This document shows, in pieces, positions 12,314 to 14,084 of a DNA stretch of 64,000 nt; position 1 is the first letter of the stretch, and every line of letters starts with the position of its first letter. The translations under genes and the position numbers were made by a program. The stretch comes from Auanema rhodensis. Its lineage: Eukaryota > Animalia > Nematoda. The notes beneath the pieces were generated by a model that did not search any database, was not told the DNA's origin, and worked only from the letters and a program-made list of their open reading frames with translations. The stretch is taken from assembly GCA_964057225.1 (NCBI GenBank), contig OZ059897.1, positions 10,044,001 to 10,108,000 on the forward strand, written 5' to 3'.

Positions 12314-14084
12314 TCAATTATTTTTTGACGAGAATCCTAAATGTGCAATTTTTCTGATTGTTGCTGGTCCATTCCAAACTCCTTTTACGAGTCCATGCCA
12401 ATATAAGGCTGGCATCAAATATCGTTTCATCATATAGTTCAAAACACTAAATCATATCAGCCATTAATATTTTTATTAAGCAGATTATTACCTTGGTTTA
12501 GATTGATCAATCGGAAGTGTTTCTAAAGGTTCACCTTTGCTGAACTCAGCAAGAATTACTTTGTTAGTATCAACAACTAATGGACAAGATGCATATCCAT
12601 CATACTAGAAATATAGAAATGAAACATTTGAAAAACTTGAAAATTCGTCACCTTCGCCGTCATTTGCTTACCCTCCATAACCAGTTTCAAATTTTTTTCT
12701 ATGGTTTTCAATTGACTAGAAACGGCAGCTGCAGTTTTAGGGTTAGGAGTGTTGACACAATCTCCAACTCCAAATACATTTGGGAAAGCTTTGCTCTGAA
12801 CATGAAAGTATTATTGAATACAAACTATAAAAATACCATATTACCTGTAAAGTTTCTGGATCAACATCAATATATCCAGCAGCATCAGTTAGAGGTTGAC
12901 AAGATAGCAAAGGTTTAATTGGAGAGCATGGTGGTCCAACATGTAGTAAAGAATACTTGAATGATAAAAATTGAAAATATTAGATTAGATATATATTTAT
13001 TTACTTCTAGATTGAATGTGTCGCCAACTCTCTGGTTTTGCTCGTTAAGATTTTCAAAACAAGCTATCTTTCTTTGGCTGTCAACAGAAATAAGATTTGT
13101 CCTTGTTCGTACAATGATATCTTTTTCCTTTGCTACTTTATCTAATGCAATTCGATACTTATCTACACCAAAAATCTAAAATATAAAAGAAAATAATGAA
13201 AATCATCAAAAAAAAAGTGTTTTCAACCTTTGGAAGTGAAGTGAAGTAATAAATATCGCCATTTGATCTTTTACCAGATTTTCGTAAAAGAGAATCCGCT
13301 ATATAAGCAATCTTTTGTGGAGCACCAGGACATTTAATTGTATCATTTGGGTAAGTGAAAATCACGTTTCCTGACTGATGTTTCTTTTCTATCAAGTTTT
13401 TTTCAAACAAAATCAAACCTCATATCCTTCAATCTCCTTGAATGTCTTTTCACAATACTTGGGTGAATAATTAGTAGTGACACCAGGTGTTTCCAAAGCT
13501 TCTTCCAACCCTTTTATCTAAAAAGGGATGAAGTTTCACATCTGGATACCCGGAAAACCCACTTTATCAAATCTAACGGTAACTCCAGTCGCTACAATCA
13601 TGTAATCATATGTAACCTCTTCTCCGTCACTAAATATTTTGTAAAGCATTATTATTAATGAGCTATGAAACACCTGAGTACAACCTTGTTGCCTTGAGGA
13701 ATGAATTCAGAAGCAGCTTTTTTTAGCCACACTGAATTAGGATGAATAAGATCTTTCTGTTTACGTGTATTAGAGTCCAGGGTCATCAAACCTCCACCTA
13801 CTAAAGTGAAGCCAGGCTGGTAGTAATGATTCTGTAAGTTTAAATACAATATTTCCCCTCCAAAAACACAGAGAGCACATGGATAAATCAACCTACTTCG
13901 GAAGGCTCCACAATTCCCACGGAAGCTGATGGTAAAATCTTTGAAAATTTGTGGCTAGCTCCTAATCCAGCCCCTCCACCTCCCACTACCAGCAACTTGA
14001 AGTGTTGGCCAGAAATTTACAACAATTAAATTCGGAAATTTCAAAGAAAAATAACTTACTGTATGCTATACACGATAACCTCAT
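12314..14084 (-). CDS. sqrd-1: Mitochondrial sulfide:quinone oxidoreductase
   Basis: [12 protein letters not shown] Rossmann motif, [51 protein letters not shown]. Intron 1 needs a non-AG acceptor (see findings). Confidence 0.95.

What the first reader, a model, noticed from the sequence alone, without database searches (positions are those of the whole stretch)
14010..14059. sqrd-1 first intron is GT-TG: the reading frame requires a non-AG 3' splice site
Seen: on the minus strand exon 1 is ATG AGG TTA TCG TGT ATA GCA TAC A|GTAAGT, and the 50-nt intron has no AG after the donor. Only cutting after ...AAATTTCTG|GC CAA CAC TTC AAG gives [22 protein letters not shown], with an intact FAD-binding first beta-strand. 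Retention shifts the frame to a TAG. The next AG (TTCAAG|) is out of phase, and the one after (GGTAG|) is in phase but deletes the HFKLLVV strand. The site is the nematode consensus TTTCAG with A->T. Known: C. elegans can use non-AG acceptors in a UUUUCAG-like context, but these are rare as the main site. Inference: a weak acceptor in the first intron of the H2S-detoxifying enzyme could be a regulated or rate-limiting splicing switch.
Basis: partly seen in the sequence, partly recalled or inferred. Interest (0 to 1): 0.75.

Follow-up and report, generated by a model that had tools for sequence, protein, structure and literature searches.

The report
Conserved worm intron ending in TG
The first intron of this roundworm's only sulfide-detoxifying enzyme gene sits exactly where five other roundworms have a normal intron, but it ends in TG instead of the near-universal AG. 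The worm therefore most likely splices at a "broken" end signal, although I found no RNA data for this gene.

Summary
On the minus strand, a 25-nt first coding exon (14084-14060) is followed by a 50-nt intron (14059-14010). The intron starts GTAAGT, ends TTTCTG, and has no AG apart from the one inside the donor.

Only the 14060|14009 junction reproduces the N-terminus typical of nematode sulfide:quinone oxidoreductases. It puts the first G of GxGxxG at residue 18, the family mode. The nearest in-frame AG junction puts it at residue 10.

Five other nematodes have an intron at the same place and in the same phase, and all five end in AG. The TG is therefore a derived A-to-T change at an ancient splice site.

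The gene is the only SQR copy in the genome. It is otherwise intact: 11 exons, 426 codons, and the other nine introns are GT-AG.

The genome is not C. elegans. Its size (180.9 Mb) matches the HiFi assembly of an inbred Auanema rhodense line, which makes an assembly error or a heterozygous allele unlikely.

I found no transcript of this species for the gene, so exact splicing is inferred, not shown.

The "regulated switch" idea has no support. This scan's earlier, unchecked notes report similar CG/TG intron ends elsewhere in this genome, which points to general tolerance. My own attempt to measure their frequency lacked power.

The parts
14112..14118 (-). TTTTCAG, a candidate spliced-leader trans-splice acceptor 27 nt upstream of the ATG
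   Evidence: Read directly from the sequence. It matches the nematode 3' splice consensus. Its function was not tested.
14060..14084 (-). Coding exon 1: 25 nt, MRLSCIAY plus one base of a split codon, phase 1
   Evidence: It has the same 25-nt length and phase as exon 1 in C. angaria, C. brenneri, H. contortus and Mesorhabditis belari. The residues resemble MKLSVIRY of Haemonchus.
14010..14059 (-). Intron 1: 50 nt, GTAAGT...TTTCTG (GT-TG), 22% G+C, no internal AG beyond the donor
   Evidence: Its length lies within the 44-65 nt range of the gene's other nine introns.
14010..14015 (-). Acceptor TTTCTG. The T at 14011 stands where the relatives have the A of AG.
   Evidence: The orthologous acceptors are ttccag, ttctag, tttcag, atttag and tttcag.
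13897..14009 (-). Exon 2 (113 nt): the FAD-binding beta1-GxGxxG region, (S)[37 protein letters not shown]
   Evidence: It aligns with human SQOR HYEVLVLGGGSGG...VAIVEPSE starting at the H. It is 63% identical to Haemonchus residues 8-47.
13996..13997 (-). First AG downstream of the intron (ttcaag|). It is out of phase, and using it would shift the frame into an early TAG.
   Evidence: acceptor 13995 is absent from the list of frame-keeping junctions.
13986..13987 (-). Second AG (ctggtag|). It is in phase but would delete SQHFKLLV and give a 74-nt intron with no pyrimidine tract.
   Evidence: The product would place GxGxxG at residue 10, against 17-19 in 26 of 29 nematode SQRs.
12314..13896 (-). 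Rest of the SQR gene: exons 3-11 and introns 2-10 (all GT-AG, 44-65 nt), with the stop codon at 12316-12314
   Evidence: every exon is stop-free in its phase, and the total is 1281 nt, or 426 codons plus the stop. The KC(P)GAPQK and SCPLV cysteine motifs align with human SQOR.

Best explanation
This is an ordinary, ancient U2-type intron of the worm's only sulfide:quinone oxidoreductase gene. Its 3' AG has mutated to TG (TTTCAG to TTTCTG), and it is still removed at the original position, joining 14060 to 14009.

The likely mechanism is as follows. The intron is defined by its perfect GTAAGT donor, its typical 50-nt length and the TTTC tract next to the cut. The second splicing step then accepts the non-AG end, probably at somewhat lower efficiency.

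Shown: the sequence, the frame logic, the orthology of the intron, and the intactness and single-copy state of the gene. Inferred: that the mRNA really carries this junction, and how efficiently.
For: 1. Sequence and frame logic.
2. Exon 2 must begin between 14016 and about 14004. An in-frame TAA lies at 14019-14017, human SQOR aligns from the H at 14004, and there is no AG in that interval.
3. The orthologous intron 1 has a 25-nt exon 1 and phase 1 in C. angaria, C. brenneri, H. contortus and M. belari, and a 28-nt exon 1 and phase 1 in Steinernema carpocapsae. All five end in AG.
4. The TG junction puts the first G of GxGxxG at residue 18, the mode of 29 nematode SQRs, of which 26 lie at 17-19.
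5. The gene is intact: 11 exons, 426 codons, nine other GT-AG introns, and both cysteine motifs.
6. It is the only SQR locus and the only copy of this DNA in the 181-Mb assembly.
7. The assembly size equals the 180.9-Mb PacBio HiFi assembly of the inbred A. rhodense APS4 line. This argues against a base error or a heterozygous allele.
8. There is precedent in C. elegans. [quoted passage not shown]
Against: There is no RNA evidence for this junction. No transcript or protein of this species was found for the gene.

The strain is an inbred laboratory line, and SQR is probably dispensable without sulfide. A recently fixed, partly disabling splice-site mutation would therefore look the same.

No sister-species locus was available to date the A-to-T change.

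The genome-wide tolerance that makes this reading comfortable rests on earlier, unchecked notes of this scan. My own statistics could not confirm it.
Confidence: 0.78

Rival explanations
1. The TG acceptor is a gene-specific control point. Weak splicing competes with the out-of-phase AG 13 nt downstream (frameshift and decay) or with intron retention. Output of the only SQR gene would then be limited by splicing and tuned by tissue or by sulfide or hypoxia.
For: Competing AGs exist at +13 (out of phase) and +24 (in phase). In C. elegans the natural TG, AT and GG acceptors are used preferentially in the germline, so non-AG sites can be used in a tissue-specific way.
Against: There is no expression or splicing data. 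The intron has the best donor and the best TTTC context in the gene, which looks like compensation rather than a designed weakness. Five relatives manage with a plain AG. Earlier unchecked notes report similar ends in unrelated housekeeping genes.
Confidence: 0.1
2. The site is a recent loss-of-function or hypomorphic mutation fixed in the inbred laboratory line. The intron is mostly retained or mis-spliced, and the gene is on its way to becoming a pseudogene.
For: The strain is an inbred line. From C. elegans biology (my own knowledge), SQR is not needed without sulfide exposure. Retention gives an early stop. A recent mutation would leave the exons intact.
Against: It is the only SQR gene. 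It shows no other defect in 1281 coding bases and nine other introns. In C. elegans, mutated non-AG acceptors with a TTTC tract are still used.
Confidence: 0.08
3. The T at 14011 is an assembly error or one of two alleles, and the real site is TTTCAG.
For: A single base decides the matter, and no reads were available to me.
Against: The assembly is a PacBio HiFi assembly of an inbred line. Only one copy of the locus is present. The rest of the gene shows no frameshift or substitution artefact.
Confidence: 0.03
4. The main product uses the canonical in-phase AG at 13987/13986 (a 74-nt GT-AG intron). The resulting protein starts [15 protein letters not shown], with the exon-1 peptide replacing the first beta-strand.
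For: This junction is GT-AG and in frame, and it is what an AG-only gene predictor would choose. The exon-1 peptide is hydrophobic.
Against: The skipped 24 nt encode SQHFKLLV, which matches the relatives and human SQOR residue for residue; intron sequence would not keep that. The acceptor ctggtag has no pyrimidine tract. At 74 nt the intron would exceed the gene's 44-65 nt range. GxGxxG would sit at residue 10, outside the 17-19 seen in 26 of 29 relatives.
Confidence: 0.03

Closest known systems
Non-AG 3' splice sites in C. elegans. These include mutant let-23 and dpy-10 acceptors (Aroian et al. [quoted passage not shown] 2015, PMC4484395).
   Same: It is a U2-type nematode intron. A short TTTC tract lies directly against the cut, and the cut is made at the expected place although the last two bases are not AG. 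TG is one of the dinucleotides seen in C. elegans.
   Different: The natural C. elegans cases are alternative sites, preferred in the germline, that lie next to a strong canonical AG site. Here TG is the only frame-keeping acceptor of a constitutive, ancient intron, with no canonical partner within 12 nt, and it is in another genus.
TG dinucleotides as alternative 3' splice sites in human U2-type introns (Szafranski et al. 2007, PMC2374985)
   Same: TG replaces AG at the 3' end of a major-spliceosome intron.
   Different: The abstract seen describes the human TG sites as alternative 3' splice sites. I did not read the paper's text. The site here has no AG partner within 12 nt.
C. elegans SQRD-1 and human SQOR (mitochondrial sulfide:quinone oxidoreductase)
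   Same: The protein family is the same: the FAD-binding GxGxxG and both cysteine motifs are conserved, and the short N-terminus is that of nematode SQRs.
   Different: One search found only one SQR locus in this genome. C. elegans has sqrd-1 and sqrd-2 (my own knowledge, consistent with several C. elegans entries). Induction by sulfide through HIF-1 is known only for C. elegans and was not tested here.

Membership tests
U2-type spliceosomal intron with a non-AG 3' end (nematode TTTC-type) | Canonical U2-type 5' splice site | tested here: met
   GTAAGT at 14059-14054. It is the best donor among the gene's ten introns.
U2-type spliceosomal intron with a non-AG 3' end (nematode TTTC-type) | The interval is a true intron: same position and phase as an intron in orthologous genes | tested here: met
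   Exon 1 is 25 nt (28 nt in Steinernema) and phase 1 in five nematodes from four genera.
U2-type spliceosomal intron with a non-AG 3' end (nematode TTTC-type) | No AG is available at or near the frame-keeping junction, and a pyrimidine tract abuts the cut | tested here: met
   There is no AG between 14054 and 13998, and TTTC lies at positions -6 to -3.
U2-type spliceosomal intron with a non-AG 3' end (nematode TTTC-type) | The mRNA carries the exact junction | not testable with these tools
No transcript or protein of this species was found for the gene.
U12-type (minor spliceosome) intron | A [AG]TATCCTT-like donor and a branch-site consensus | tested here: not met
   The donor is GTAAGTTA. 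[quoted passage not shown]
Sulfide:quinone oxidoreductase (SQOR / SQRD-1) | N-terminal FAD-binding beta1-GxGxxG region | tested here: met
   Exon 2 aligns with human SQOR residues 3-38 of chain 6oi5_A. There are weak Pyr_redox_2 hits.
Sulfide:quinone oxidoreductase (SQOR / SQRD-1) | Both conserved cysteine motifs of the active site | tested here: met
   IKCPGAPQK aligns with VKCAGAPQK and YASCPLV with YTSCPLV. That these are the catalytic cysteines is from my own knowledge of human SQOR.
Regulated unproductive splicing switch | A competing unproductive site exists | tested here: met
   An out-of-phase AG lies at 13997-13996, and retention gives an early stop.
Regulated unproductive splicing switch | The ratio of productive to unproductive products changes with condition or tissue | not testable with these tools
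   No RNA data were reachable for this gene.

The most novel reading that the evidence does not exclude
In this worm the 3' end of tiny introns is chosen by distance and a TTTC tract rather than by AG. The efficiency lost at the TG end would make the only sulfide-detoxifying gene splice-limited and tunable, for example between germline and soma or under sulfide or hypoxia.
Probability: 0.1. Interest if true: 0.75.

Novelty: new member of a known kind. Interest (0 to 1): 0.5.

Why it matters
AG at the intron's 3' end is one of the most invariant signals in eukaryotic genes. Natural introns whose only usable end is not AG are very rare.

This one lies at a position shared by at least five nematode species from four other genera. 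The ancestral state (AG) and the derived state (TG) are therefore both clear, and the gene leaves no canonical alternative.

If RNA data confirm exact removal, the intron is a clean natural substrate for asking how the second splicing step finds its site without AG. The same would apply to the other cases this scan has reported in the same genome.

There is also a practical point. AG-only gene predictors will mis-model the start of this gene by deleting the first strand of the FAD-binding fold.

Tried and rejected
1. RNA or protein evidence from this species.
   - A full-length search with the C. angaria orthologue listed 120 relatives. None was more than about 51% identical to the window.
   - A search with the 78-aa open frame around exon 3 found only a Heterorhabditis fragment.
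   - No sister-species locus could be obtained.
   - The third word search was left unused, because no available query covered fragments of 137-229 aa that include the N-terminus.

2. Joined-model searches. The joined exon 1-2 peptide and the joined coding sequence were not sent to any search tool.

3. An independent measure of non-AG acceptors on 264 kb (the window plus 200 kb downstream).
   - I tried ORF-bridging counts, frame-consistency tests, codon and third-order Markov coding scores, EM-trained splice matrices, and a test of strong donor plus TTTYNN motif at fixed distance.
   - Even true GT-AG introns were barely enriched. Exons are short, splice sites are degenerate and the coding bias is weak.
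   - The tests therefore say nothing about TG or CG ends.

4. A paralogue or second haplotype carrying AG: none was found.

5. Other donors in exon 1 that could reach the AG at 13997/13996 in frame: by my own reading of the sequence, none is in phase 0. No script tested this.

Full report
**What is there.**

On the minus strand an ATG lies at 14084-14082, 27 nt downstream of a TTTTCAG (14118-14112) that looks like a trans-splice acceptor. The first coding exon is 25 nt and encodes MRLSCIAY plus one base. It ends at 14060 before a perfect GTAAGT donor.

The next 50 nt (14059-14010) are 22% G+C. They contain no AG except the one inside the donor, and they end TTTCTG.

One search listed every acceptor position that keeps the frame open from this donor:
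- 14009 gives [21 protein letters not shown].
- The first AG downstream (13997-13996) is out of phase.
- The second AG (13987-13986) is in phase but gives [13 protein letters not shown].

Retaining the intron runs into a stop. An in-frame TAA at 14019-14017 prevents exon 2 from starting further upstream. Exon 2 and the following coding sequence have no in-frame ATG before the GxGxxG motif.

One detail should be added. Moving both cuts one base downstream (TA...GG) gives the same mRNA. GT-TG is the reading that keeps the consensus donor.

**The gene.**

I read the rest of the gene from the sequence and checked it exon by exon.
- It has 11 exons totalling 1281 nt, which is 426 codons plus the stop at 12316-12314.
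- Every exon is stop-free in its phase.
- It has ten introns of 44-65 nt. Nine are GT-AG. One of those is an AAG acceptor, and several have weak donors such as gtttga and gttgaa.

Three exons align with human mitochondrial sulfide:quinone oxidoreductase:
- Exon 2 aligns from the first strand of the FAD-binding fold: [13 protein letters not shown] against HYEVLVLGGGSGG.
- Exon 6 and exon 10 carry the two conserved cysteine motifs.

Searching the whole assembly with the Haemonchus protein found only the exons of this one gene. The DNA of exon 1, intron 1 and exon 2 occurs once. This is therefore the worm's only SQR gene, and nothing else in it looks damaged.

**Relatives.**

A search of protein representatives with exon 6 and a word search with the C. 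angaria orthologue gave nematode SQRs.

In 26 of 29 of them, the first G of GxGxxG is at residue 17-19, with the mode at 18. The TG junction puts it at 18. The in-frame AG junction puts it at 10.

The exon-1 peptide itself resembles the relatives. Compare [12 protein letters not shown] here with MKLSVIRY-G-QHF in Haemonchus and MRLS in Pristionchus.

I fetched the gene loci of five species and located the first intron by requiring the spliced translation to match the annotated protein.
- C. angaria, C. brenneri, H. contortus and Mesorhabditis belari all have a 25-nt first exon in phase 1.
- Steinernema carpocapsae has a 28-nt first exon in phase 1.
- All five introns end in AG: ttccag, ttctag, tttcag, atttag and tttcag.
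- In Haemonchus the acceptor reads caatttcag|GGCAGCATTTC. Here it reads aaatttctg|GCCAACACTTC.

The intron is therefore old. The cut is at the homologous base, and the only difference is T for A at position -2.

**Which genome.**

The splice sites and intron sizes are unlike C. elegans. The assembly holds 180,911,798 bases in 112 contigs, and the window lies on a 23.1-Mb contig. A 2026 preprint describes a 180.9-Mb PacBio HiFi and Hi-C assembly of the inbred Auanema rhodense line APS4. The 2019 genome paper gives a median intron of 47 nt for this species.

I take the genome to be that assembly. This agrees with earlier notes of this scan, but I did not confirm it by direct sequence comparison.

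HiFi data from an inbred line make a base error or a heterozygous site unlikely. That is an inference; no reads were seen.

**Mechanism.**

In C. elegans the UUUUCAG/R motif is the U2AF binding site. A TTTC tract was sufficient for splicing after TTTCAG was mutated to TTTCAA. [quoted passage not shown]

The simplest account here is the same. The donor, the short fixed length and the TTTC tract commit the intron, and the second step accepts TG at the usual distance. Intron 1 has the best donor and the best TTTC context of the ten introns. This fits compensation, but it is one gene only.

**What is not shown.**

I found no transcript or predicted protein of this species for the gene, so exact removal is inferred.

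Because the line is inbred and SQR is probably dispensable without sulfide, a recent, partly disabling mutation cannot be excluded. No sister-species locus was reachable to date the change.

**The wider pattern.**

Earlier notes of this scan on other parts of the same genome report that about 2% of the tiny introns end in CG, TG, AT or GG. Some notes say transcript assemblies show exact removal, for example in the RNA polymerase I gene 29.5 kb before this window and in crld-1. These are unchecked AI notes.

I tried to measure the rate myself on 264 kb with several ORF, coding-potential and motif statistics. Even true GT-AG introns barely stood out, so the tests have no power.

If the notes hold, this intron is one more instance of a genome-wide tolerance, not a device specific to sulfide metabolism. 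The scan has thus found the phenomenon before on other DNA.

**Verdict.**

The GT-TG reading is strongly supported by comparison (confidence about 0.8) but lacks RNA proof. The regulatory-switch inference is unsupported (about 0.1).

It is a new member of a known kind: nematode U2-type introns that are cut without AG. It is unusual because the TG is the only usable acceptor of an ancient, constitutive intron.

Noticed in passing
window 12314-14084 (minus strand): The splice signals of the SQR gene are loose throughout. Donors include gtttga, gttgaa, gtgacg and gtgggt. One acceptor is AAG (cattcaag| at 12956), and only intron 1 has the GTAAGT consensus. All introns are 44-65 nt.
   Followed up: partly
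whole assembly G000; the SQR locus at C5:10056314-10058084: Only one SQR locus was found in the 181-Mb assembly, whereas C. elegans has sqrd-1 and sqrd-2 (my own knowledge). All eight matches to the Haemonchus protein are exons of the window's gene.
   Followed up: partly
window 14112-14118 (minus strand): A perfect TTTTCAG lies 27 nt upstream of the ATG. It is a likely spliced-leader trans-splice acceptor that would give a 27-nt 5' UTR.
   Followed up: no
whole assembly G000: The assembly size of 180,911,798 bp matches the 180.9-Mb germline assembly of Auanema rhodense APS4 described in bioRxiv 10.64898/2026.08.27.747507. That species eliminates about 61% of its germline DNA from somatic cells. 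The window lies mid-contig on a 23.1-Mb contig.
   Followed up: partly
L003 (Haemonchus contortus CP149425.1) 1501-10711: The orthologous first intron is about 4.3 kb in Haemonchus, against 44-177 nt in the other species compared, yet it keeps the same 25-nt first exon and the same phase.
   Followed up: no
protein P0001 (766 aa): One representative hit is a head-to-tail fusion of two SQR-like units. It may be a tandem gene pair merged by annotation.
   Followed up: no
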